A stretch of DNA of 64,000 bases from Anthoceros angustus (GCA_010909165.1 MU008193.1:186001-250000); one strand, 5' to 3'. Positions 32,079 to 63,245 are shown, counted from the first letter of the stretch. Notes: generated by a model not told the origin, from the sequence alone. Translations and numbers: made by a program.

Positions 32079-33153
32079 TCATTGTTCCTCCCAAATCTGG
32101 GCTGTGCCAACAAAGGCGAATAAAAAATGCCCACGTTCCTCCCGTTCTTCAGATCTCACCTATCTTTGCTCGCCAAAACAAGGCATGCTAAACCAACAGG
32201 CACTATGTAAATTGTCTACACCGGCCGGAACAGTGAAGGGTGAAGAGTGCAGAGCTAACAAATTACCCCACATTGGGCGGCTCAATGGACGGAACAACTT
32301 GTGGCAATATGATCTTGTACTCTGGTACTGAGTCCTCATTGTGTGTACAGGTTAGCCCGCGCGGTATGAGTGGACTTTTTGGAACGGGGGCCCGCAGCTA
32401 GTTGGCCCCTATCCGGGATTGAATGTTCGACAATGAGACACGGTTGACCAGGTGCCTCAATAGGTCCACAATGCGGGTGATTGCCCGCTCTCATTGGACT
32501 CTCGAGTTCCGGGGCGGCCTGATAGGTAAGCGGGCTACGCGTGGTACGCGTTTGTTTAGCTCTAACTCTAATTTTGGAGTGGAGCGCTGAAGCAAGCAGG
32601 CACCTACCCAATCATTCCTAAGCAGCATGAATCTTCGACAGGTGACACGCCTGTGCGAGGCAAAAGAAGAGTCACCCGATGCCCTGCCTCTCAGACCTCA
32701 TCGTCGACGTCTCTCACAGAGTCAAGGTTGCAGTCGAGAGACTCGAGAGGGTGGAGAGGAGGTGAATCGACACACTGGTGCCACTGGGTGCTTGGCAATG
32801 AGAAGACGCTGCGGCTGATAAGGACACTTCACGCCTTCACACCTGCCTGTGGTGGACAAAGATAACCCTGCAAAACGAATACGACCATGTTGCATATAAA
32901 GGACGGGACACTGAAGGATCGACATGGTGGGCGGAGGCCATGGCAGGCTCCCAAACATATCGACATGGTGGGCTGAGGCCATGGCAGATTCCCAAATATA
33001 TCGACATGGTGAGCGGTGTCTTGGCGCCGCACCAGGTGCCTACACTCGAATTGCAGTGCCAAACATTTTGGAGGTGTATAGTGCCACTCCAGATTCTTAG
33101 TCCACAGAAGCGGAGACACTAAGCGGTGTCCTGGCGCTACACCAGGTGCCTAC

Positions 33154-33376
33154 CACGTGTCATCTTGTTGTGCGGAATGATGGGAGCGGGAGATTTCTCG
33201 ACATGCACCAAGACACAAAAGATCACCAGGTGCATCCGCCAGTTCACAAGGGCTGCCTGCATGGAATATTCGACAACCAGTACTTCTGCAGTGGCCTCTT
33301 AGCTTGCTTGCGTCTCTTGGAACTTGGAATTGATAGAGGTGGTAAACTGCCAGTGTTACCCGACTGTGACTGCATG
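33154..33376 (+). promoter_or_regulatory. ABRE/G-box plus RY elements upstream of storage-protein gene 1
   Basis: CACGTGTC at 33154; RY (CATGCA/TGCATG) at 33202, 33258 and 33371, all within 360 bp of the ATG. Confidence 0.55.
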
Positions 33377-33507
33377 TTGATTGCATTTGCCATATCCGCC
33401 CTCTACCATCCGGGAGTACAAATGCTCCTCGTCTTGTCAGGCTCTTTCATCTCGCATTTCAGCTTGTTCCGTCTGCTACCCAGAAAATCCATCTGGAAGT
33501 GCTCACC

Positions 33508-35230
33508 ATGGGTCGCTCTTTGGCTTTAAATTTGGTCTTGGGCCTGCTGCTTGTTGGCACCTTTGCAAGCGCGGAGCGTGAGGAGCTCCAACTGGGAGAA
33601 CCCCGCAAGACACTCCAGACCAGTGGAGGACAGATTGAGGAATGGGACGTTCGGGTCCTTAGAGATGCCAATGTCGCCGAAGCCAGGATCACACTCAGGC
33701 CGCGTGGCCTGCTCCTGCCCCAGTACTCTGATTCCGCTTCCGTGGGGTATGTGGAGCAAGGTGAGTCCGACATGACAAGGTTCTGAACACCCTGACAGAA
33801 TCTTGATGATACATTTGATGAGTCGGGGATCTTCAAGGCGCAGCCGCATCTTGGTCTAATCGATGCTGCTTGAAACGCAGGAGAGGGCATTGTGGGTCTT
33901 CTGAGCGGCTACTCCTTGGGCGAGTCCTCTGCAGTCCGCCGTGTAAGGCGTGGCGATGTCGTCGCCTACCCCCGAGGAGTTGCCGGATGGTGGTACAACA
34001 GTGGCAACGAAGACCTCCGCATCCTGGGCATCGCAGACACATCTGCTTCACCGAACGGTGATTACAATGTGAGTGTTCCAGACATACCAGTAGGGAGATC
34101 ACACGACTTGCGCAGCAAATTGTGCGATTCTCGCGACTCCAAGACCGATTCTTCCTTTGCTGTGCCTGCAGGGATTCCATCTGATCGGCGGAGGAAGTGG
34201 GGAAAGCAAGAAGGGATGGCGCTGGGAACGGCATGAGCGTGAGAAACGTGGGCAGGAAGAATTCCGAGGAGTTCTCCACGGCTTCAGGAGGGAATTCTTG
34301 GCTGATGCCTGGGACCTGGACGAGAGCCGAGTGGACGAGCTGCTGGACAGCCAGAGGGGCGCTGGGATTGTGCTGGTTGAGCGTGAGATCAGGCTTCCGG
34401 AACAGGCCAACAGGGAAGAAGGCCGCAGCTTCTCTCGATCCGCCGACCGGGCCGACCCTGACCTCCGGGAGTACCTTGCGAATGGGGAATTCGTCTACAA
34501 CGTTAGGGAGGGATCTGCCGATGTGCGCGTCCGGGATGCTGGTTTCTACAACAGCGTGAACAGGTTCAAGCTGCCCATCCTCAAGGCTGTCGACCTGGGT
34601 CTCACATACGGCCGCCTCGAGAGCGTACGTTTTCACAACCCATCCATCCCCTTCAATGCTTTTTGACCGATGCTCCACAGCTCTCTGTTTAATGCTCCTC
34701 GTCTGCTGCTTGATGCATGCAGAACGCCATCGTGGCTCCCCAGTGGTCACCCACGGGACATGAAGTCGTCCACATCCTGAGGGGCAGCGCTAATCTGCAG
34801 ATCGTTAACAACAACGGGGAGCAGCTTCTGGACAGGGAAGTGAGGGAAGGCGACGCTTACGTGATTCCCCGTTTCTATGCCCACGGCGTCCAGGCCGGCG
34901 ACAAAGGCCTGGAATGGATCAGCTTCTACACCACCCACCAGTGCGTGTCTTAACAATTCGTTTTCAGATTTGATTCTGGATTGCAAAAAGCATTGCACTG
35001 ACTAATACTTGCATTTGCATTGCAGGCCTCTTGTTGAGGCTCTTGCAGGCAGAACATCCGTGCTGAGGCAGCTCCCGGAGGACGTGGCCGCTGCAGCTTT
35101 CAACATTGATATCGAGCAGGTCCGAGAAGCTAGGGAGACCCGAAGGGAGCGTGAAGCTCTGTTGCTGCCTGCTGCAGGCCGCCACCGCCAGAGGAAGGCT
35201 TCTTTCGTCAGCAGGTTCCTCAAGTTTTAA
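33508..35230 (+). CDS. 11S/legumin-like bicupin, secreted (putative spore/seed storage protein), copy 1, 438 aa
   Basis: Exons 33508-33760, 33881-34068, 34172-34624, 34723-34940, 35026-35230; all introns GT-AG; 1317 nt in frame; hydrophobic signal peptide; LLLPQYSDS..GYVEQG and APQWSP..HEVVHILRG cupin motifs. Confidence 0.92.
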
Positions 35231-37547
35231 AAAGCTATGGCGAAAGAGCAAAACGAGGCTGAGTCCCGTGGAGAAAAATGCACAGAGCGAAATCGAGTGT
35301 AGCTGCTTCTGATGACTGAAACAGAGTTCTCTTGTGATTTCAACTGAAACACAGCATCGATGCCTTCCAGCGCCAGTTCCCAAAATTAAATGAAGAATAC
35401 CACCAATTCCCAAAATTGAAGGAAGCAAAACAAGTGACTGAAGAAACATCCTTGTCACTGTACAATTCTTGGTCCTGTGATCATATGCATGCAGAGTATA
35501 GGGTGATAACCTGCCGTCAAAAACCTGGCGTGCATCTTTCAGTTCACCATATTTTGCATACATGTCCACCAGGCAGGCAGGTGCCGACCAGTGTGTCATC
35601 CAGCAGTCCTACTTAGACAATCTGTGTCTGCAGCTGCCTGCCCCCTCTGTAGGGCACCAGTGCCTCAGGCCGAAAGGAGGCCTCCCCGCTCCATTTCTCC
35701 GTACAGAACAAGTGTCTCATGTCCGAGCCCTTGGCGGGCATACCCAGCAAATCAGGGCATTTCATGTCACCACAGTTGGCCCTCTTTACTCAACAGCCTC
35801 CCAGGGCCATCCTGTACAATTGGAGGAGGCACCTCATCAGCCGTGTGTCACTGCCATACAGGCCTTACTAGTTAGGGTTGATTGGGTAGGGGCCCGCGTG
35901 CTGTCGGCCCCCGTTCCAAAATTGCGAATCAATTAAACCTGGAACATGTCGCAGTTCTTCTGGAGTGCGGCATAACCATAGGAGAGGAAAGCACTGGATT
36001 ATATTCCCACAGGTTGGTCCGTCAACTGAGCGGTCCAATGTGGGGTAATTGTTCGTTCTCCACTCTTCACTGTTCCGGCCGGTGTAGGCAGTTACATTGT
36101 GCCTGTTGTTTTAGCATGCCTTGTTTTGGCGAGCAGAGGCAGGCGATATGTGAAGAGCGGGCGGATTGAACACTTTCCCCAAGAAGCTGGCCAGAGGTCT
36201 GTCTCAACACCTGCCGTTTAAATGAAAAACCTTCTTACTTCCGGCCATGCATGCTGCTTAGAATTGATAGGGTAGGGGCGTTCGACGCATGCTTCCAGCC
36301 GCCATCCCGCCAGATCAACAAAGCCTTCACAAGGGAGTTGCCGGATCAACAATGGAAGTTTGGCCCATTCCTTAGTTAGGAAAGGTGACATTTTCCTCGA
36401 AGGGGAGGGCGTAGGGTGATACTGCCACAGCTGGCCATGTCAGTGGACGGTCCAATGTGGGATACTTGTGCACTGTCCAGTCTTCACTCTTCCAGCCTGC
36501 TAGGGGCCCTCGTGCTTCCGGCCATGCATGCTGCTTAGAATTGATAGGGTAGGGGCCTTCTATGCATGCTTCCAGCCCCAGTTCCAAAGTTGCAAAACGT
36601 AAGAAACCGAGTATACTTGCAAAGTGGCTAACCGGCCACAAATTTTACAGTATGTGACGGAAAGCAGAGCATAAGGTGATAACAATGGAGCAGTAGTGGT
36701 GTAGTGGAAGGCTGATTCGCTTCCATGTCCAGGCCCGAGTTGGATTCTCGGTTGGTGTATGTGTTGATATCATGCAAACTACATTAGTTCATTGTTGGCC
36801 CAATGTCTCGTCATTCTTGGCTCACCACTTTCCATATTCCGCCAGCGAAGGCATGGTGCGCTGCCGAAGAAGACAGAGCAAAGGCTCTGTCGCCTGCCGT
36901 GATGGCCATGTACGTTTGCCTAAGACGGTCATTACCCTACATTTTGTATGTAATCGGCCGACTACATTCTTCCGAGCCTACATTAGTACATGCTGCTTAG
37001 GCTTGACAGGGTAGGGGCCTACTTGCTTCCAAGTTCCGACCCCCGTTCCAAAAACGTGTTCACTCTGAGAGAGGATTCGGAAAATCCTCCATGCCCCTAC
37101 TGGGAGACAAGAGGTTTATATTGGCACAGCGTGTGCCATAGACTGAGCGGCCCGATGTGGGATAATTGATGGCTCTCCACTCCTCACGGTTCCCGCCAAT
37201 CTATACATTGACATGGTCCTGGCCCCTGTTCGTTTTGCATGCCTTGTTTTTTGGCGAGCAAGTTTAGGCAGATGAAGGTGTGAAGTGTCAGGCATGCAAA
37301 CGGCATATTCTTGCGTCTCTTGGGACGCTGGAACGAGTGGGATTGTGACCAGTTGAACTGGCAGTGATGCCGGAGTGGGAGCTGCAGTCCGGAATTCGCA
37401 AGGGTGTGTAGACCGCCCAATACAGATGTATCCGCACTGCTCCTGGGAGTACAAATGCGGCTACCCGCCGCTGCGTTTCTCATCCCTCGGCACTCGGTGT
37501 CTGGCGTTGTCTGGGATTGTGGATAGGAGATCTGCAGTGGTGTCGCC

Positions 37548-39634
37548 ATGGGTCGCTCTCTGTTTTGGGTGTTGGGTTTGCTCCTGGTGGCGTCCTTTGC
37601 GACAGGGGAGCGTGAGGAGCTTCGGCTGGGAGAGCCGGAGGAGGTGTTCCGCACTGATGGAGGTCGGGTCGAGCAATGGCAGCCCGATAACCGGGCTCTG
37701 AGAGATGCTAACGTTGCATCCGCCAGGGTCGTGCTCAAGCAACGTGGTCTGTTCCTGCCCAAGTACTCTGATTCTGCGGCCGTCGGGTATGTCGAAGAAG
37801 GTGAGAGGATAGCAGAAGGTGTTGGTGAATATGGGTGCTGAAGATCGTTCTTTGTTTTGTTTGATTTGAGGTCGAGCTGAAAGTTTGTCTCCTGTCGACG
37901 GCGCCCGCATGTGCAGGTGAGGGCATTCTGGGCGTTCTGAGCGGGTACGCTGAAAGCTCCAGAATCCGTCGGGTGAGGCGCGGCGATGTCGTTGCCTTAC
38001 CTCGGGGAGTAGCTTCATGGTGGTACAACAGCGGCAATGAGGAGCTCCGCATCCTCGGCTTCGCCGACACATCTGCATCAGAGAACGGGGAGTACAATGT
38101 AAGCGCTTGCTTGTGGTGTGGAGCGACATCCATGTTTTGGGCACGGGTGCACATGGGTTTGCAAATTTTGGTGGGTGCCGAGTTCGGTATCCGAATGTGT
38201 ATGTTCGCTGCGCAGGCGTTCTATCTGGCCGGTGGAGGACGAGGTGAAGGCAGGAGGAGGCTGAACCGAGGGAAAGGCGGCGAGCGCCGGGAACGGGAAC
38301 GGGAGGAACGCGAGCGCCGGGAACGGGAACGGGAGGAACGCGAGCGCCGGGAACGGGAACGGGAGGAACGCGAGCGCCGGGAACGGGAGGAGCGCGAGCG
38401 CCGGGAACGGGAGGAGCGCGAGCGCCGGGAACGGGAGGAACGCGAGCGCCAGGAACGGGAGGGGGACGAGAACGGAGGAGAACGTAAGGAACGTGAGAAA
38501 CGCGAGCGTGAGGAACGCGAGCGACGCGAACGGGAGGAGCGGGAACGAGAACGGGAGCGTGAGCGCGAACGGGAACGGGAGGAGCGTGAGCGGGAACGGC
38601 GGCGAAGGGAGCGTGAAGATCGCAAGCACGGAGGGCACGGACGGGAGCAGGAGGAGGAGTACGGCTCGATTCTCCAAGGTTTCAGGAGAGAGTTTTTAGC
38701 TGAGGCCTGGGATCTGGACGAGGCCAGAGTGGACGAGCTGCTGGACAGCCAGAGGGGCTCGGCTATCGTCTTGGTTGATCGTGAAATCAGGGTGCCCGAG
38801 TTCGAGCAGGAGGAGGAGTTGAACAGGGAGGAGGGTCGTAGCATCTCCCGATCCGCCGAGAGGGCCGATGCTCATCTCCGCGAGTACCTGGCCAGCGGAG
38901 AGTTTGTGTTCAACGTTCGCGAGGGATCTGCTGATGTGCGCGTCCGCGATGCTGGTTTCTACAACAGCGTCAACAGGTTCAAGCTGCCCATCCTCAGGGC
39001 TCTCGACTTGGGTCTCACTTACGGCCGTCTGGAGAACGTATGTTACGTTTTTTCCAGATCTTTTATGGTTTCTGCAGATTTTGCATGCAGTTGTGATTAC
39101 TCACGAATCCGAATTGGGGTTTCTGCAGAATGCAATTCTGGCTCCTCAGTGGTCGCCCACGGGACATGAGGTGGTGCATATCTTGAGGGGTAGTGGCAAC
39201 TTGCAGGTGGTGAGTCACAATGGGGAGCAGCTTGTGGATAGGGAAGTGCGGGAAGGTGAAGCGTATGTGATTCCCCGTTTCCATGCCCACGGCGTTCAGG
39301 CTGGCAACGAAGGCTTGGAGTGGATCAGCTTCTACACCACCGACCAGTGAGTGTTCCTGCCTGCTTTTTAGCTTTGCTCTGCTGGTGTCTGTCTGCTTGG
39401 AACTTGTCTTGTTTATTTGCCGGACATCGCATGTGCAGGCCCCTCGTGGAAGCTCTTGCAGGCAGGACCTCCGTGCTGAGGAGGCTTCCGGAGGAAGTGG
39501 CAGCAGCAGCCTTCAACATCGATGTTGCTCAGGTGCGCGAAGCAAGAGAGACTCGGAGGGCTGAGGAGCCGCTTCTGCTGCCAGCTGGAAAGAGCCACCG
39601 CGAGAGGAAGCATCCCTTCCTCGCCACCTTCTGA
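37548..39634 (+). CDS. 11S/legumin-like bicupin, secreted, copy 2 with Arg/Glu repeat insertion, 556 aa
   Basis: Exons 37548-37800, 37917-38098, 38216-39037, 39129-39346, 39439-39634; introns GT-AG at the same positions as copy 1; 1671 nt in frame. Confidence 0.92.
38281..38630 (+). repeat. Coding minisatellite (Arg/Glu-rich)
   Basis: Three perfect 30-mers CGAGCGCCGGGAACGGGAACGGGAGGAACG (38281-38370), three 24-mers (38371-38442), then degenerate ER codons. Confidence 0.95.
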
Positions 39635-40847
39635 AAAGCTGCAGAAACGTGTTTCAACTTGTCTAAGTGCAGATCAGTGCTCCACCTTGTAGTAGGAATT
39701 GCCAAGCAAGTCTTACAAGGGTGGGAAGGACAATTTTGTTAGTGCCAGTCAGCAGCGAGGGGGGTTCCTCTGTTTCGCTAAGAGGATGTTAGCCTTTCCA
39801 TGTAAATAGACTACTTTTGCGTTAAGTACTAAGACGAAGTTTCCTTTCAGCACCTCCAAAGCGTTGTCATCTTTGTACCCCCCTAATGTGTCGACAGACA
39901 GACAGACTCCTTACACTTTGAGCCCCCCCCTTATCGATCGACAGGCATATCCCTTTGTCAGTATTCTTGTCTCATTTAGTAGGATTTGTGCCTCTCGGAT
40001 GATTTGTGAAGGCTGTATTGATTAGACTGTTTTTCAGTAGTACTGACCAAACTGCTGGTTTGTAGAGGCTTTGCTGCTAACAAATCAACAGAATGACGGA
40101 GACTTGAGACAGCCTGGAGTTGCCTCACAAAACGCCTCACAAAGCTTGAGAGAACTCTAGAACCTCTCACCAAACATCCTTTTTTGTTAATGACAACATG
40201 TAAGTCATGACGAAGTAGAAAACACGCATTTAGCTGTTCCGCACGTTGTCAAAAAGATGGGTTTGTGACGACTTGCAGATGCACCAATTCGACCTCCAGA
40301 GTCCAGATTCTCGATCCACATGCTGGGCCGATACACAAAGCGGTGCCTTTGCGCCGCACCCAGTGCCTACATTCGATTTGCAGAGCGAATATAGTACAAA
40401 CATTCTGGAGATCACTAGTACAGTGCCTCTCCAGATTCTCAGTTCACACACGGCGAGAAACTGATAAGCGTGTCCTGGCGCCACACCAGATGCCTACGAG
40501 GTGTCATCTTGTTTGTGCGGAGTAATCGGAGGCGGGGATTTCTCCAAATGCATCGAGACACAAAATTTCACCAGGTGCATGCATCCACGACCTCGCAAGG
40601 GCTGCCTGTACGGGATATTCGACAACCAGTACTTCTGGAGTGGCCTCTTAGCTTGCGTCTGTTGGAACTTGGAACAGAGGCGGTAAACTGCCAGTGTTAC
40701 CCAAGAGTGACTGCATGTTGATTGCATTTGCCATATCCGCCCCTGCCATCCAGTAGTACAAATGCTGCTCGCCTCGTCTGGCTCTCTCATCTAGCATTTC
40801 AGCTTGTTCCCTCTGGTACCCACAACATCCATCTGGAAGTGGTCACC

Positions 40848-42566
40848 ATGGGTCGCTCTTTGGCTTTATTCTTGGGCCTGCTGCTTGTGGCATCCTTCGC
40901 CAGCGCCCACGGTGAGGAGCTCCAACTCGGAGAGCCCCGTGAGACCCTGCGGACCAATGGAGGACAGATCGAGGAATGGGACGTTCGGGTTCTGAGAGAT
41001 GCCAACGTCGCAGAAGCCAGGATCATTCTCAGGCCGCGTGGCCTGCTCCTGCCCCAGTACTCTGATTCCGCTTCCGTAGGGTATGTTGAGCAAGGTGAGT
41101 CTGACATGACAAGATTCTGGACATCCTGTCCAAATCCGATGAAACACATTTGATCAGGCCGGATGTGCAATGCGCAGCAGCATGTGGGATTAAGCGATGC
41201 TGCTTGAAACGCAGGAGAGGGCATTGTGGGTCTTTTGAGCGGCTACTCCTTGGGCGAGTCCTCTGCAGTCCGCCGTGTGAGGCGTGGCGATGTCGTTGTC
41301 TTCCCCCGAGGAGTTGCCGGATGGTGGTACAACAGTGGCAACGAAGACCTCCGCACCCTGTGGATCTCAGACACATCTGCTTCACCGAACGGTGATTACC
41401 ATGTAAGTGTTCCAGACGTACCAGTAAAGAGATCTTACGCCTTGCGCAGCAAATTGTGCAATTCTCACGACTCCAAGACGGGTTCTTCCATTGCTGTGCC
41501 TGCAGCCATTCGATCTGATCGGCGGAGGAAGCGGGGAAAGCAGGAGGGAACGGCGCCGGGAACGGGAATATGAGCGTGAGGAACGTGGGCAGGAGGAATT
41601 CAGAGGAGTCCTCCACGGCTTCAGGAGGGAATTCCTGGCTGATGCCTGGGACCTGGACGAGAGCCGAGTGGACGAGCTGCTGGACAGCCAGAGGGGCGCT
41701 GGGATTGTGCTGGTTGAGCGTGAGATCAGGCTTCCGGAACAGGCCAACTGGGAAGAAGGCCGCAGCTTCTCTCGATCCGCCGACCGGGCCGACCCTGACC
41801 TCCGGGAGTACCTTGCGAATGGGGAATTCGTCTACAACGTTAGGAGGGATCTGCCGATGTGCGCGTCCGGGATGCTGGTTTCTACAACAGCGTGAACAGG
41901 TTCAAGCTGCCCATCCTCAAGGCTGTCGACCTGGGTCTCACATACGGCCGCCTCGAGAGCGTACGTTTTCACAACCCACCCATCCCCTTCAATGCTTTTT
42001 GACCGATGCTCCACAGCGCTCTGTTTAATGCTCCTCGTCTGCTGTTTGATGCATGCAGAACGCCATCGTGGCTCCCCAGTGGTCACCCACGGGACATGAA
42101 GTCGTCCACATCCTGAGGGGCAGCGCTAATCTGCAAATCGTTAACAACAACGGGGAGCAGCTTCTGGACAGGGAAGTGAGGGAAGGTGACGCCTATGTGG
42201 TTCCCCGTTTCTATGCCCACGGCGTCCAGGCCGGCGACGAAGGCCTGGAATGGATCAGCTTCTACACCACCCACCAGTGCGTGTCCTAACAATTCGTTTT
42301 CAGATTTGATTCTGGCTTGCAAAAAGCATTGCACTGACTACTACTTGCATTTGCATTGCAGGCCTCTTGTTGAGGCTCTTGCAGGCAGAACATCCGTGCT
42401 GAGGCAGCTCCCGGAGGACGTGGCCGCTGCAGCTTTCAACATTGATATCGAGCAGGTCCGAGAAGCTAGGGAAACCCGAAGGGAGCGTGAAGCTCTGTTG
42501 CTGCCTGCTGCAGGCCGCCACCGCCAGAGGAAGGCTTCTGTCGCCAGCAGGTTCCTCAAGTTTTAA
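40848..42566 (+). CDS. 11S/legumin-like bicupin, secreted, copy 3 (recent duplicate of copy 1; one-base frameshift as assembled)
   Basis: Exons 40848-41094, 41215-41402, 41506-41960, 42059-42276, 42362-42566; total 1313 nt, one short of frame; AGGGAGG in copy 1 is AGGAGG at 41842-41847. Confidence 0.85.
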
Positions 42567-44334
42567 AGAGCTATGGGGAAATAGCAAAGCGAGTCTGAGT
42601 CCCGTAGAGAAAAATGCACAGAGCGAGATCGAGTGTAGCTGCTTCTGATGACTGAAACAGAGTTCTCTTGTGATTTCAACTGAAACACAGCATCGATGCC
42701 TTCCAGCCCCAGTTCCCAAAATTGAATGAAGAATATCACCAGTTCCCAAAATTGAAGGAAGCAAAACAAGTGACTGAAGAAACATCCTTGTCACTGTACA
42801 ATTCTTGGTCCTGTGATCATATGCATGCAGAGTATAGGGTGATAACCTGCCGTCAAAAACCCGGCGTGCATCTTTCAGATCACCATATTTTGCATACATG
42901 TCCACCAGGCAGGCAGGTGTCGACCAGTGTGTCATCCAGCAGTCCTACTTCGACAATCTGTGTCTGCAGCTGCCTGCCCCTCTGTAGGGCACCAGTGCCT
43001 CAGGCCGAAAGGAGGCCTCCCCGCTCCATTTCTCCGTACAGAACAAGTGTCTCATGTCCGAGCCCTTGGCGGGCATACCCAGCAAATCAGGGCATTTCAT
43101 GTCACCACAGTTGGCCCTCTTTACTCAACAGCCCCCAGGGCCATGCTGTACAGCTGGAGGAGGCACCTCATCGGCCGTGTCTCACTGCCATACAAGCAAT
43201 GCTAGTTAGGGTTGATTGGGTAGGGGCCCGCATACTGTCGGCCCCCGTTCCAAAATTAAGTGTTGATTAAGCATTGGACATGTCGCAGCTCTTCTAGAGT
43301 GCGGCATAATCCGTGGAGAGGAAAGCACTGGATTATATTCCCACAGGTTGGTCCGTCACCTGAGCGGCCCAATGTGGGGTAATTGTTCGTTCTCCACTCT
43401 TCACTGTTCCGGCCGGTGTAGACATTTACATTGTGCCTGTTGTTTTAGCATGCCTTGTTTTGGCGAGCAGAGGCAGGCGATATGTGAAGAGCGTGCGGAT
43501 TGAACACTTTCCCCAAGAAGCGGGCCAGAGGTCTGTCTCAACACTTGCCGTGTGCCGGCAACTCAAGTTGCCCAATGTGGGGGGATGGCTTTTGCTCGAC
43601 ATCCACTGCTTCGTCCTGTGTAGGACAACGTTCCTGTCCGTTCTTGGAGACCTTGTGGAGTCTTGTCGGCTGCCCAAAGACAAAATGAGGAGCAACCAAG
43701 AGCCGAGCATACAGTGTAGAGACATACCAGCCAGCGGCAGGAGATTGAATGAAGCAGATCTAGATCAAATAAAATTCTTCTTCTTCTTCTTGATGTACCA
43801 ATTCAGATGCCATGGCCTCTGCGTATCCTCTCTACGCTCTCTTGAAGTTCAGGCGAGTACTTCAATTCCTCTTCAAGTACAGCAGCATAGGAAGTTTTCA
43901 TTGTGGCCGCATGTTGGTGGGGATTGGGGGGGATTGATGGTACCTTGGGAGGAATTCGAGAAACATCTTGTGGAAGCTGCAGCTCACCAAATCAGTGTGC
44001 CCGTGGAAGAGAACGGATAGTGGGGTTCAGGCACCACATCAATGTAAGGTAAGCCCGCACTGCTCGACCAGCCCACCCAGGTAGCCCGGTGTCTTGGCGC
44101 CGCGCCAGATGCCTGCAGGCCACTTGTGATACGGAATCCGAAGCACATGTGGAGATGGGCAAGCCCCCGCAGGAACCAGGGGCATGCACTAGTACTGCTT
44201 ACTACTCGCAAGGCTCGCTTGCATGCATATGCGATCTTCTTAAAACACTCCACCGCAGTCCGACTCTGTTTAAGACTGGAATGGGTGCGGCAAACTTGTT
44301 GAGGTTATGGCGATTAGAGCCCTGATTAGGGCAC

Positions 44335-56439: not shown

Positions 56440-57042
56440 CCCAATTACTTCTGATGTGGTGAAATCCGAACCTTGCCCCTTCTTGGCTGCAAGTTGTGCT
56501 TGTTTTATGACTCCATTCTATGTCGTCTTGAAGGTACGATAACTGTCGGGAAGAGAACTCAGCAAAGCTATGGCTGCTTGAGCCTCAGTCAACGTCATCC
56601 CACAAGATGACAGTTGAGCTTGTGCTGGCCTGAACTTCTTAATGTGTTCGGAGATGGCTTCATTTTCACCCATCTGCATTTGGCAAAATGCCTTTGTTGC
56701 ATTTAATACGCTCATTGCATCTATTGCATCGTAGAGCTGGTTGAGGTTGGTCCATGTTGTGGCTGCATCTGCAGCTCCTGTCACATGATGCGCAGTAGTC
56801 CTATCTAATCCAGATAAGATTACATTTCGTGCTTTCCTATCAGTCTTCTCCCCAACTGCGTCCGCGATCTTTGGATTTGTCCACTCATAGGTTTGGGATA
56901 GCGCCATCGATCGCCTGAGGTCGTTGTCTTCAAGGATGGATTGCATTCGCATGGACCAAATGTCGTAATCAGACCCTGAAAATCTGTCTCTTTCTTTGAA
57001 GTCAATCTTAAATGTGTTATTGATGGTAGTGGATCCAGCCAT
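56440..57042 (-). pseudogene. Copia gag N-terminal fragment
   Basis: RFSGSDYDIWSMRMQSILED..DRKARNVILSGL..MQMGENEAISEHIKKF..IALLSSLPDSY. Confidence 0.85.
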
Positions 57043-61880: not shown

Positions 61881-63245
61881 TCAGACAGCAGCTACGACAG
61901 GGACCTCGGACCTTTCCCTCCGAGCCAAATGCTGCTTTAAGAAGGTAATTCTAGCAGTCTCAAATGCGCAGTAACCTAGAGCTGAGAAGCATGCACTGTA
62001 CAAAAGGCGAGGCCCAACTCCTCTGGTCAAACCATGCCATCCTTCCTCCACCCAGATCTGGTTCAGAGTGGAGGCAAGGCCCTTGTAAGAGGAAGCAGCA
62101 ATCTTGGCCGTGAGTTCTGCATCAGCCCGTAACGTGGCCTGCACAGCCTCCGTACCCAACAAGACAGACTGTTTAGCTTGAGTCATGAGCCGCGTCTTGG
62201 CAACATCCAGAGGAGTCGTGAGAGCAGCAGATATCACTCCCGCCAGAGCTCCAGAAGTCACACTCTGCCACGGCTCGAGATTGGTCTGTCCAGTTCTCCT
62301 CAACCATCCTGCCTTGAGGTACTCAAAGGAAGAGAAACTGATGACACTGGCAGGGAGGTTTCTCGACAGTGCTGCCGAGTAGCCAGCATAAAGGCCAAGC
62401 ACTCCGTCCTTCTGCACGGTTCTCAGCAACACCTCCCATGATCTTCCCACAGCTCCTGCCTGCATTCTCTGCGTGATAACTTCCTTCGGGACAAGGATGG
62501 CCGAGGACACAATATTCCCCATGGCACCTGCCAGGGGAGGCACCAGCACGGGAGGGCAAGCCGGGATCCGGGCTAGGAGAGACTTCCCAAACTCACAGGT
62601 GCCGAAGTAGATAGCAGATGACAGAACGGAACCAAATATCACAGCCGAAATTCCGCTGTAGAATCCAAGAATCCCCTTGGTTTTCAGTATCTTCATCGCC
62701 ACATCCAGGGGGCCACTGTACAATTCAGCTGCACCTTTAGTCTGAAGCCTGGTCTTGATGGTGTCCAGCGGGTGTAGGCACGCATACGTGAATCCCCCCG
62801 CTACCCCTCCAGCTGCAGCACCAATGCCAGCTCTCTCCAATGTGGAGATTTTCTTCATCAAAACCCTGGACTCCGAGCTGGCTTGAGCAGCCCGGTTGAT
62901 CCACCCTACCTCATCGCTCCCTCTGCTATCTACAGCAGCTCCTGCGGACACAAACTTCACACTGGCACCAGCAAAACATGAATCCCGCCGCTTTCTCGAT
63001 CTTTGCTTCGAGCTGGCGCCTCTTTCCCACACCGACTTTCCAACTTCGTCGGGAAGGAATTTGAGAAGCCTGCTGCCATCGTTCCACCCGCCGTGAGCAC
63101 CTTCAACGAAAGGGCTGTACTCCACCTCAAAACCATCGACCATCTCTCCGAATCCGAGTGCAAAGAAAGGACCCGACTGTTGCGCAATCCGGTCTGAGAG
63201 ATGCCCTTGCAGGGTACGCCATTGCCGGCTTCCCGAGGGCGTCAT
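61881..63245 (-). CDS. MFL1: Mitoferrin-like 1, mitochondrial-carrier-family protein (plastid type), single exon, 454 aa
   Basis: Three carrier repeats (PLDTIKTRLQ, PKEVITQRMQ, PLDVAKTRLM); ERAGIGAAAGG, SSAIYFGTCEFGKSLL, RNLPA..SFSSFEYLK and SACFSALGY.AFETAR match Arabidopsis MFL1 as recalled. Confidence 0.9.
   Translation of the reverse strand: MTPSGSRQWRTLQGHLSDRIAQQSGPFFALGFGEMVDGFEVEYSPFVEGAHGGWNDGSRLLKFLPDEVGKSVWERGASSKQRSRKRRDSCFAGASVKFVSAGAAVDSRGSDEVGWINRAAQASSESRVLMKKISTLERAGIGAAAGGVAGGFTYACLHPLDTIKTRLQTKGAAELYSGPLDVAMKILKTKGILGFYSGISAVIFGSVLSSAIYFGTCEFGKSLLARIPACPPVLVPPLAGAMGNIVSSAILVPKEVITQRMQAGAVGRSWEVLLRTVQKDGVLGLYAGYSAALSRNLPASVISFSSFEYLKAGWLRRTGQTNLEPWQSVTSGALAGVISAALTTPLDVAKTRLMTQAKQSVLLGTEAVQATLRADAELTAKIAASSYKGLASTLNQIWVEEGWHGLTRGVGPRLLYSACFSALGYCAFETARITFLKQHLARRERSEVPVVAAV

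What the first reader, a model, noticed from the sequence alone, without database searches (positions are those of the whole stretch)
33508..42566. All three globulin paralogs have no cysteine and no internal methionine
Seen: spliced translations (438, 556 and ~437 aa) contain no Cys, and the only Met is the initiator, which is removed with the signal peptide. Arg is abundant and Lys scarce. This holds in the more diverged copy 2. At a typical ~4% Cys+Met, zero in ~430 residues is very unlikely by chance. Established: 11S globulins normally have a conserved disulfide; sulfur-poor storage proteins such as the beta-conglycinin beta subunit are favoured under S limitation. Inference: selection for a sulfur-free, nitrogen-dense reserve.
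Basis: partly seen in the sequence, partly recalled or inferred. Interest (0 to 1): 0.75.

Follow-up and report, generated by a model that had tools for sequence, protein, structure and literature searches.

The report
Sulfur-free legumin-like storage protein genes
Two of three neighbouring genes in a seed-free land plant (probably a hornwort) encode secreted, arginine-rich relatives of 11S seed storage proteins whose mature form contains no sulfur amino acid, and a close relative in a related plant is methionine-rich, which suggests that nitrogen and sulfur reserves are kept in separate proteins, as in legume seeds.

Summary
Copy 1 (438 aa) and copy 2 (556 aa) have clean five-exon GT-AG models, no Cys, and only the initiator Met, which lies in a signal peptide. 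Copy 3 as assembled has a 1-bp deletion in exon 3 and stops after 274 aa; it is S-free only if read through the break.

The proteins are legumin-like bicupins. Their best matches are 11S globulins, not 7S. They lack both 11S disulfide cysteines and the Asn-Gly cleavage site, as other non-seed relatives do.

With family frequencies and an S-free ancestor, P is about 3e-4 to 3e-3 for both copies together, and the Cys absence alone is not significant.

Sulfur poverty is a clade trait. Two relatives from another plant sample have 2 and 3 S residues, while a third, nested in the same clade, has 18 Met. Signal-less and more distant homologs have ordinary S content.

Selection for an S-free, N-dense reserve is plausible, but expression and storage remain untested.

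The scan has noted related genes elsewhere in this genome (a Cys-free pair 14 kb upstream, Met-rich clusters on other pieces). The hornwort bicupin expansion is published (PMC7027989).

The parts
33508..35230 (+). Copy 1: intact legumin-like bicupin gene, 5 exons (33508-33760, 33881-34068, 34172-34624, 34723-34940, 35026-35230), 438 aa, Cys 0, Met 1 (initiator)
   Evidence: Model and splice sites. Cupin_1 in exons 1, 2, 4 and 5. 11S globulins are the best solved relatives. Junctions are continuous in alignments.
33508..33573 (+). Signal peptide of copy 1 (22 aa, MGRSLALNLVLGLLLVGTFASA, then EREEL); it contains the only Met
   Evidence: Read directly from the translation: short basic n-region, 14-residue hydrophobic core, A-S-A at -3 to -1. 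No signal-peptide predictor was available.
37548..39634 (+). Copy 2: intact diverged paralog, 5 exons (37548-37800, 37917-38098, 38216-39037, 39129-39346, 39439-39634), 556 aa, Cys 0, Met 1, Arg 104, Glu 105
   Evidence: Against copy 1: dN/dS 0.17, dS 0.90, 102 amino-acid differences over 431 aligned codons, none to Met or Cys.
38263..38616 (+). Glu/Arg repeat insert of copy 2 in exon 3, between the two cupin barrels, built from 24- and 30-nt tandem DNA repeats
   Evidence: family D1; translation.
40848..42566 (+). Copy 3: near-duplicate of copy 1 with the same exon layout (40848-41094, 41215-41402, 41506-41960, 42059-42276, 42362-42566). CDS is 1313 nt and frameshifted as assembled.
41843..41845 (+). 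Break in copy 3: one G missing from a G run. The shifted frame ends at the TGA at 41893-41895 after 274 aa. This is either a real recent mutation or a homopolymer assembly error.
   Evidence: Exon 3 alignment of copy 1 against copy 3; coordinates.
33076..36217 (+). 3.1-kb duplicated unit carrying copy 1. Its partner is 40418-43551 (copy 3), 92.6% identical overall, but about 98-99% from mid exon 3 onward and 86-91% in the 5' part.
   Evidence: families D5-D9, D13.

Best explanation
The locus is a tandem array of legumin-like (11S-type) bicupin genes of a seed-free land plant, probably a hornwort. Each product enters the secretory pathway through a cleaved signal peptide that removes the only Met. 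The mature proteins of copies 1 and 2 therefore contain no sulfur and are very nitrogen-dense (11% and 19% Arg). I propose that they are reserve proteins, probably of spores or desiccating tissue, that store nitrogen and carbon at no sulfur cost. They would belong to a gene family whose paralogs have specialised in sulfur content, some nearly or wholly Met-free and others Met-rich. Differential expression could then set the N:S ratio of the reserve, as legume seeds do with the S-free beta subunit of beta-conglycinin against S-richer 11S and 2S proteins. Shown: gene structure, family, composition, purifying selection, Met depletion beyond a neutral expectation, and Met enrichment in a nested paralog of a related plant. 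Inferred: secretion and vacuolar deposition, the storage role, and any regulation by sulfur supply.
For: - Family: two Cupin_1 domains. Best solved relatives are 11S globulins (E 5e-07 for exon 3; E 6e-17 for exon 4, with no 7S globulin listed).
- Composition: Cys 0 and Met 1 in copies 1 and 2. In-frame ATG/TGY count is 0, against 53 and 57 out of frame.
- Mutational opportunity: 81-89 codons are one step from ATG and 116-136 one step from TGY, including 19 and 41 CGY Arg codons that are one transition from Cys.
- Constraint: dN/dS 0.17 at dS 0.90 between copies 1 and 2.
- Nitrogen density: 1.51 and 1.70 N atoms per residue, against 1.23-1.55 in 25 homologs.
- Clade: copies 1 and 2 group with L001 and L002 (100/98 support). 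Those two have only 2 and 3 S residues after the signal peptide, while outgroups have 5-30.
- Neutral expectation: P(no S in both copies) is 3e-4 to 3e-3 even with an S-free ancestor. Met over the four S-poor proteins is 4 against about 17 expected.
- Specialisation: L003, from the same sample as L001 and L002 and sister to L001, has 18 Met in the mature protein, P about 8e-6.
- Arg/Glu-rich expansions arose independently at different places: between the domains in copy 2 and at the N-terminus in L001.
- Precedent: the beta-conglycinin beta subunit is devoid of Met and Cys (PMC7490426), and S-poor 7S globulins rise while S-rich 11S globulins fall under S deficiency in pea (PMC6698706).
Against: - There are no expression, localisation or protein data. 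The published view of hornwort bicupins is stress or desiccation adaptation, not storage (PMC7027989).
- Absence of Cys is not significant on its own (P 0.28 per copy), and the whole clade is Cys-poor, including the Met-rich L003.
- With an S-free ancestor, zero Met in one copy is only P about 0.014.
- RY and ABRE motifs in the promoters are few, and enrichment is weak.
- The Met-rich paralogs of this same genome are known to me only from unchecked scan notes.
- Copy 3 may be a pseudogene.
Confidence: 0.45

Rival explanations
1. Redox and folding constraint rather than sulfur economy. These are secreted or desiccation-associated bicupins with no disulfide. Free Cys is selected against in the oxidising secretory pathway, and Met is selected against because it oxidises during long dry survival. 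The S-free state would then be a robustness trait of a protective or structural protein.
For: Cys is 0-1 in all five clade members, including the Met-rich L003, so Cys avoidance is separate from Met content. The proteins have signal peptides. The hornwort genome paper links bicupin expansion to drought tolerance (PMC7027989).
Against: The sister paralog L003 carries 18 Met on the same scaffold with a signal peptide too, so Met is tolerated there. The recurrent Arg/Glu expansions and high N density are better explained by a reserve role.
Confidence: 0.25
2. No adaptive meaning. The ancestor of this small clade happened to be S-poor, and the strong Arg/Glu/Gly bias plus drift kept Met and Cys at or near zero in two recent paralogs.
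For: With an S-free ancestor the per-copy probabilities are modest (Met P 0.014, Cys P 0.28). Copies 1 and 2 share most of their history (stem 0.30-0.37 against tips of about 0.15). One lycophyte homolog, P0019, is also very S-poor (1 Cys, 1 Met after the first 25 residues).
Against: The joint probability for both copies is 3e-4 to 3e-3. Clade-wide Met is 4 against about 17 expected. L003 moved the opposite way (P about 8e-6). There are 102 replacements between copies 1 and 2, including 13 Leu/Val and Ile/Val exchanges, and none to Met. Many codons are one step from ATG or TGY.
Confidence: 0.2
3. Gene-model artefact: the real transcripts use other exons or splice sites that add Met or Cys.
For: No RNA-seq was available. 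One alternative GT in exon 4 (34945) would add a Cys codon.
Against: That alternative donor breaks the frame with the only usable acceptor (reading of the sequence). All junctions are GT-AG with strong consensus. They are conserved in copies 1-3 and in L001 and L003. They align without gaps to full-length homologs, and junction 1 is read through in the intron-less L002.
Confidence: 0.05

Closest known systems
11S globulins / legumins of seed plants (e.g. amaranth 3qac, pumpkin 2e9q, prunin 3ehk, glycinin)
   Same: Both have the bicupin architecture with two Cupin_1 domains and a signal peptide. They are the best sequence matches. Both are Arg-rich and Lys-poor, have a variable Glu/Arg-rich region between the barrels, and share motifs such as NAxxAPxW and LAGRTSV.
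   Different: The Asn-Gly cleavage site is absent (DPDLREYLA where 11S has N-G-xEExxC). Both disulfide cysteines are absent (Ser/Ala and Ala at the aligned positions). The genes have four introns, whereas angiosperm legumin genes have three (from my own knowledge; not tested here). There is no sulfur at all, against about 1.5-2.3% S amino acids in legume 11S (PMC6698706).
Beta subunit of soybean beta-conglycinin and other S-poor 7S vicilins
   Same: The mature storage globulin is devoid of Met and Cys (PMC7490426). It is a bicupin and secretory, and it coexists with S-richer storage proteins.
   Different: It belongs to a different bicupin branch: the window proteins match 11S globulins, not 7S. 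S-responsive expression is proven for the 7S proteins and untested here.
Expanded tandem bicupin genes of the hornwort Anthoceros angustus (Zhang et al. 2020, PMC7027989)
   Same: Both are tandemly duplicated bicupin genes in a hornwort-type genome. The window array is most likely part of the same phenomenon.
   Different: The main-text passages that I read (located by searching the paper for 'cupin', 'storage protein' and 'globulin') interpret the expansion as drought adaptation and do not mention sulfur content, signal peptides or Met-rich against Met-free paralogs. I did not read the rest of the text or the supplements.
Legumin-like proteins of lycophytes and ferns (Diphasiastrum P0001 and P0019, Selaginella P0014 and P0015 'legumin A', Psilotum P0006; fern spore legumin-like proteins, Kakhovskaya 2003 as cited in PMC12598765)
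   Same: They share the scaffold, at 36-46% identity, and also lack the 11S disulfide and cleavage site.
   Different: They carry ordinary amounts of Met and Cys (typically 5-11 S residues), except P0019, which has 1 Cys and 1 Met after the first 25 residues. Some lack a signal peptide.
Elemental sparing in proteins (sulfur-depleted proteins made under S limitation in cyanobacteria and yeast)
   Same: Both involve eradication of Met and Cys from abundant proteins as a way to save sulfur.
   Different: This is recalled from my own knowledge, not tested here. Those cases are S-starvation-induced isoforms of working proteins, not reserves.

Membership tests
11S globulin / legumin, seed-plant sense | Two Cupin_1 barrels in one chain (bicupin) | tested here: met
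   Pfam Cupin_1 hits in exons 1 and 2 (N-terminal barrel) and exons 4 and 5 (C-terminal barrel).
11S globulin / legumin, seed-plant sense | Closer in sequence to 11S than to 7S globulins or enzymatic cupins | tested here: met
   In the PDB searches all top hits are 11S globulins. Oxalate decarboxylases follow at E about 1e-06, and no 7S globulin is listed.
11S globulin / legumin, seed-plant sense | Conserved Asn-Gly site where the proprotein is cut into acidic and basic chains | tested here: not met
   The aligned segment reads DPDLREYLANGEF where 11S has N-G-(L/V)EE(T/K)IC.
11S globulin / legumin, seed-plant sense | Interchain and intrachain disulfide cysteines | tested here: not met
   Alignment columns at copy 1 positions 96 and 250 hold Cys only in the seed-plant-type sequences. 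Copies 1 and 2 have Ser/Ala and Ala there. The proteins contain no Cys at all.
11S globulin / legumin, seed-plant sense | Cleavable N-terminal signal peptide | tested here: met
   Read by eye: hydrophobic core and small residues at -3 and -1. No predictor was run.
11S globulin / legumin, seed-plant sense | Accumulates as a hexamer in protein storage vacuoles of seeds | not testable with these tools
   There are no expression or protein data, and the organism has no seeds.
Legumin-like bicupins of non-seed plants | Bicupin homologous to 11S, without the disulfide or Asn-Gly site, grouping with lycophyte, fern and bryophyte sequences | tested here: met
   Homologs from Diphasiastrum, Selaginella and Psilotum. 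Trees. Alignment.
Sulfur-poor storage globulin class (functional class, e.g. beta-conglycinin beta subunit) | Mature protein with no or almost no Met and Cys | tested here: met
   Copies 1 and 2 have 0 Cys and 0 Met after the signal peptide.
Sulfur-poor storage globulin class (functional class, e.g. beta-conglycinin beta subunit) | Abundant reserve whose share rises when sulfur is scarce | not testable with these tools
   Needs RNA-seq or proteomics under sulfate starvation.
Enzymatic cupins (germin, oxalate decarboxylase type) | Metal-binding motif G(X)5HXH(X)3-4E(X)6G | tested here: not met
   Read: the N-terminal barrel has no His in the motif region, and the C-terminal barrel has GHEVVH (HxxxH), as 11S globulins do.

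The most novel reading that the evidence does not exclude
A seed-free plant lineage already splits its protein reserves into sulfur-free, arginine-dense legumin-like proteins and methionine-rich paralogs of the same family. The adjustable N:S storage system known from legume seeds would then predate seeds, having evolved by rapid and opposite compositional selection on tandem duplicates.
Probability: 0.3. Interest if true: 0.6.

Novelty: new variant of a known kind. Interest (0 to 1): 0.4.

Why it matters
Storage globulins with no sulfur are known only from the 7S branch of seed plants. A 2025 review states that non-seed plants lack typical reserve proteins and calls for study of N-rich spore proteins (PMC12598765).

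If these hornwort-type proteins are reserves, they give a concrete, testable case for three things:
- reserve proteins before seeds existed;
- element-specific (N against S) specialisation among recent tandem duplicates;
- fast directional change of amino-acid composition, from 0 to 18 Met among close paralogs.

The finding is modest in scope. The gene family and its tandem expansion in hornworts are published, and the adaptive reading is still untested.

Tried and rejected
- Word-based homolog searches gave only one hit each: the conserved part of copy 2's 398-aa ORF found Diphasiastrum P0001, and copy 1's exon 3 ORF found the Logan fragment P0002. This genome's own proteins and close full-length relatives are therefore not in that database, and no transcript evidence could be drawn from it.
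- Identity as a 7S vicilin is rejected. PDB hits are 11S.
- An enzymatic cupin is rejected. There is no HXH metal motif.
- An alternative donor at 34945 that would add a Cys is rejected. It gives the wrong phase for the only acceptor at 35025 (sequence).
- A PPR-like motif (LVDMYAKYGELKDARQVFD) sits at the start of the antisense 211-aa ORFs at 34964-35599 and 42300-42935. Pfam gives no PPR hit, so I do not count it as a gene.
- RY and ABRE promoter motifs: about three CATGCA cores per 800 bp against about 1 per kb background, and no full CATGCATG within 800 bp of any start. This is too weak to use as evidence for a maturation-type promoter.
- Naive binomial significance (4% S amino acids) is replaced by a tree-based simulation.
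The exact-match look-up of the full-length products in transcript assemblies, and a structure prediction of the whole protein, were therefore left out.
- The taxon was not verified here. I ran no further search on it, so 'hornwort' rests on scan notes and on consistency with my data.
Full report
**1. What is in the sequence**

The interval holds three head-to-tail genes on the + strand. I read the DNA and built models that I checked in a script.

- Copy 1: exons 33508-33760, 33881-34068, 34172-34624, 34723-34940, 35026-35230, giving 438 aa.
- Copy 2: exons 37548-37800, 37917-38098, 38216-39037, 39129-39346, 39439-39634, giving 556 aa.
- All eight introns in these two copies are GT-AG, 85-120 nt, with good consensus (AAG|GTGAGT, polypyrimidine-CAG).

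The models are supported by homology.
- The same junctions recur in relatives L001 and L003.
- L002 has no intron 1 and reads straight through that junction (VEEGEGLLGFLSGY against VEQGEGIVGLLSGY).
- Global alignments to full-length homologs show no gap at any junction.
- The in-frame ATG just before exon 4 and a TGC just after the exon 4 donor lie in introns. The only frame-compatible donor and acceptor pair excludes them.

Copy 3 (40848-42566) has the same layout, but its CDS is 1313 nt.
- One G is missing from a G run at 41843-41845 (AGGGAGGG in copy 1, AGGAGGG in copy 3).
- As assembled, it therefore ends at the TGA at 41893-41895 after 274 aa, with a shifted tail RRDLPMCASGMLVSTTA.

**2. 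The composition claim**

| Copy | Length | Cys | Met | Arg | Lys | Glu |
|---|---|---|---|---|---|---|
| 1 | 438 aa | 0 | 1 | 50 | 9 | 41 |
| 2 | 556 aa | 0 | 1 | 104 | 9 | 105 |

- The single Met is the initiator of a typical signal peptide (MGRSLALNLVLGLLLVGTFASA, then EREEL). The mature proteins would therefore hold no sulfur. The signal peptide was judged by eye, with no predictor.
- Copy 3 read with XXX at the break is also Cys 0 and Met 1.
- The depletion is frame-specific. ATG, TGC and TGT occur 53 times (copy 1) and 57 times (copy 2) in the two other frames of the CDS and never in frame after the start. The introns are rich in these triplets.
- There is ample mutational opportunity. 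Between 81 and 89 codons are one step from ATG and 116-136 are one step from TGY, including 19 and 41 CGY Arg codons that are one transition from Cys.

**3. What the proteins are**

- Pfam finds Cupin_1 in exons 1 and 2 and again in exons 4 and 5.
- PDB sequence searches, run exon by exon, return 11S globulins first: amaranth 3qac and pumpkin 2e9q for exon 3, and prunin and others at E 6e-17 for exon 4. No 7S globulin is listed, and oxalate decarboxylases follow far behind.
- The canonical cupin metal motif is absent (reading).

Two hallmarks of seed 11S globulins are missing.
- The Asn-Gly cleavage site and the following Cys are replaced by DPDLREYLA.
- The PGC Cys of the acidic chain is Ser or Ala.
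- In my alignment only the seed-plant-type sequences have those cysteines. The missing disulfide is therefore normal for non-seed legumin-like proteins and is not a peculiarity of this locus.

Other features:
- Copy 2 carries a roughly 120-residue Glu/Arg insert between the barrels, made of 24- and 30-nt tandem repeats.
- Copies 1 and 2 evolve under purifying selection (dN/dS 0.17, dS 0.90).
- Copy 1 and copy 3 belong to a 3.1-kb duplication (92.6% identity). Its 3' half is nearly identical, which suggests gene conversion.

**4. Relatives**

- The word-index search found only one hit per query: Diphasiastrum P0001 and a Logan fragment.
- I therefore ran the exhaustive phmmer search with exon 3 of copy 1. 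It returned 56 hits.
- Named hits are from Psilotum, Selaginella ('legumin A'), Diphasiastrum and Closterium.
- All 25 full-length outgroups hold Met and Cys, with an S fraction of 0.5-8.5%, pooled C 0.9% and M 2.2%.
- Signal-less homologs (P0008, P0010, P0014) have 2-5 Cys and 6-9 Met.

The closest hits were exon-sized fragments from one Logan sample, SRR33208241. I fetched three contigs from it and modelled the genes.

| Locus | Length | Cys and Met | Note |
|---|---|---|---|
| L001 | 621 aa | 1 Cys and 1 Met after the signal peptide | About 190-residue Arg/Glu/Asp N-terminal extension |
| L002 | 492 aa | 0 Cys, 3 internal Met | Lacks intron 1 |
| L003 | 468 aa | 1 Cys and 18 Met after the first 30 residues | Met-rich |

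In maximum-likelihood trees, copies 1 and 2 form a clade with L001, L002 and L003 (support 100/98 and 100). L003 is sister to L001.

**5. Is it more than chance?**

I simulated LG evolution with the family's own frequencies along the clade tree, conditioning on an ancestor that was already S-free. This is the assumption least favourable to the claim.

- P(no S in copies 1 and 2) is 3e-4 to 3e-3 for 300-413 sites.
- Per copy, about 4.2 Met are expected and 0 observed (P about 0.014).
- Per copy, about 1.3 Cys are expected and 0 observed (P about 0.28, not significant).
- Over the four S-poor proteins, about 17 Met are expected and 4 observed (P about 1e-4, approximate because tips share branches).
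- In L003, 5 Met are expected and 18 observed (P about 8e-6).

The signal is therefore real. It is a property of the clade, it concerns Met much more than Cys, and it runs in both directions among close paralogs.

Nitrogen density is high: 1.51 and 1.70 N atoms per residue, against 1.23-1.55 in the outgroups.

**6. Mechanism**

Best reading (0.45): these are reserve proteins that store N and C without S, in a family whose paralogs have specialised in S content.
- Support: the opposite shifts in Met content, the independent Arg/Glu expansions at different positions (copy 2 against L001), the signal peptide, and the legume precedent. The beta-conglycinin beta subunit is devoid of Met and Cys (PMC7490426), and S-poor 7S globulins rise under S deficiency (PMC6698706).
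- Gaps: storage, deposition and S-responsive expression are inferred. I could obtain no expression data.

Rivals:
- A redox or folding constraint on a secreted, desiccation-linked protein (0.25). This fits the clade-wide lack of Cys and the drought interpretation in PMC7027989, but not the Met-rich sister.
- Drift from an S-poor ancestor (0.20).
- A gene-model artefact (0.05).

**7. Comparison with what is known, and novelty**

[quoted passage not shown] The cupin and storage-protein passages that I read in that paper say nothing on sulfur content.
- My text searches found no paper on S-free legumin-like proteins of bryophytes. These searches cover open-access text only.
- Scan notes, which I did not check, report a Cys-free pair 14 kb upstream and Met-rich (up to about 10% Met) legumin-like clusters elsewhere in this genome. 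They also call the genome a hornwort.
- My L003 result shows the same contrast independently, in a related sample.
- I file the finding as a new variant of a known kind: an S-free member of the legumin-like lineage. Interest is moderate.

**8. Limits**

- The joined-model look-up in transcript assemblies and a whole-protein fold were left out.
- The taxa of the window and of SRR33208241 were not verified here.
- The break in copy 3 may be an assembly error.

Noticed in passing
window 41843-41845 (copy 3 exon 3): A 1-bp deletion in a G run inside a block that is otherwise about 99% identical to copy 1. This is either a very recent inactivation or a homopolymer assembly error. Scan notes mention frameshifts in nearby eRF1 genes too, which could point to assembly indels.
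   Followed up: partly
window 33076-36217 vs 40418-43551: Mosaic identity between the copy 1 and copy 3 units. The upstream region, exon 1 and intron 1 are 86-91% identical, but the stretch from mid exon 3 to about 400 bp past the stop is 98-99% identical. This suggests gene conversion of the 3' half.
   Followed up: partly
window 33158-33507, 37198-37547, 40498-40847: Short blocks are conserved in all three promoters despite the divergence of copy 2: CTTGCGTCT(C/G)TTGG(A/G)AC, AACTG(C/G)CAGTG, and AGTACAAATGC at about -95. These are possible shared cis elements.
   Followed up: partly
window 36230-36300 and 36507-36577: Two 71-nt direct repeats, 92% identical, each carry a full RY motif (CATGCATG) about 1.0-1.3 kb upstream of copy 2. 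They account for two of only four CATGCATG sites in the window.
   Followed up: partly
L001:2189-3026: The relative L001 has a roughly 190-residue Arg/Glu/Asp-rich extension between the signal peptide and the first barrel. It resembles the N-terminal extension of some vicilins, but here it is in a legumin-like gene.
   Followed up: partly
L002:1538-2086: The relative L002 lacks intron 1, so exons 1 and 2 are fused. This is an intron loss within the clade.
   Followed up: partly
L003:5120-7222: A Met-rich paralog (21 Met in 468 aa) in the same sample as the S-poor L001 and L002. It lies between a SufE/NadA gene and mTERF and PPR genes.
   Followed up: yes
window 34964-35599 (-) and 42300-42935 (-): 211-aa antisense ORFs downstream of copies 1 and 3 begin with a PPR-like string (LVDMYAKYGELKDARQVFD), but Pfam gives no PPR hit. 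This may be a relic. A scan note elsewhere describes a PPR-cupin entanglement in this genome.
   Followed up: partly
window 61881-63245 (-); 56518-57042 (-): An apparently intronless 454-aa mitochondrial carrier ORF (three Mito_carr repeats) and a copia-type gag fragment.
   Followed up: no
P0037 (L004, SRR12063579) and P0050: More distant legumin-like proteins with 31 Met in 392 aa and 25 Met in 352 aa. Met-rich members therefore arose more than once in the wider family.
   Followed up: no
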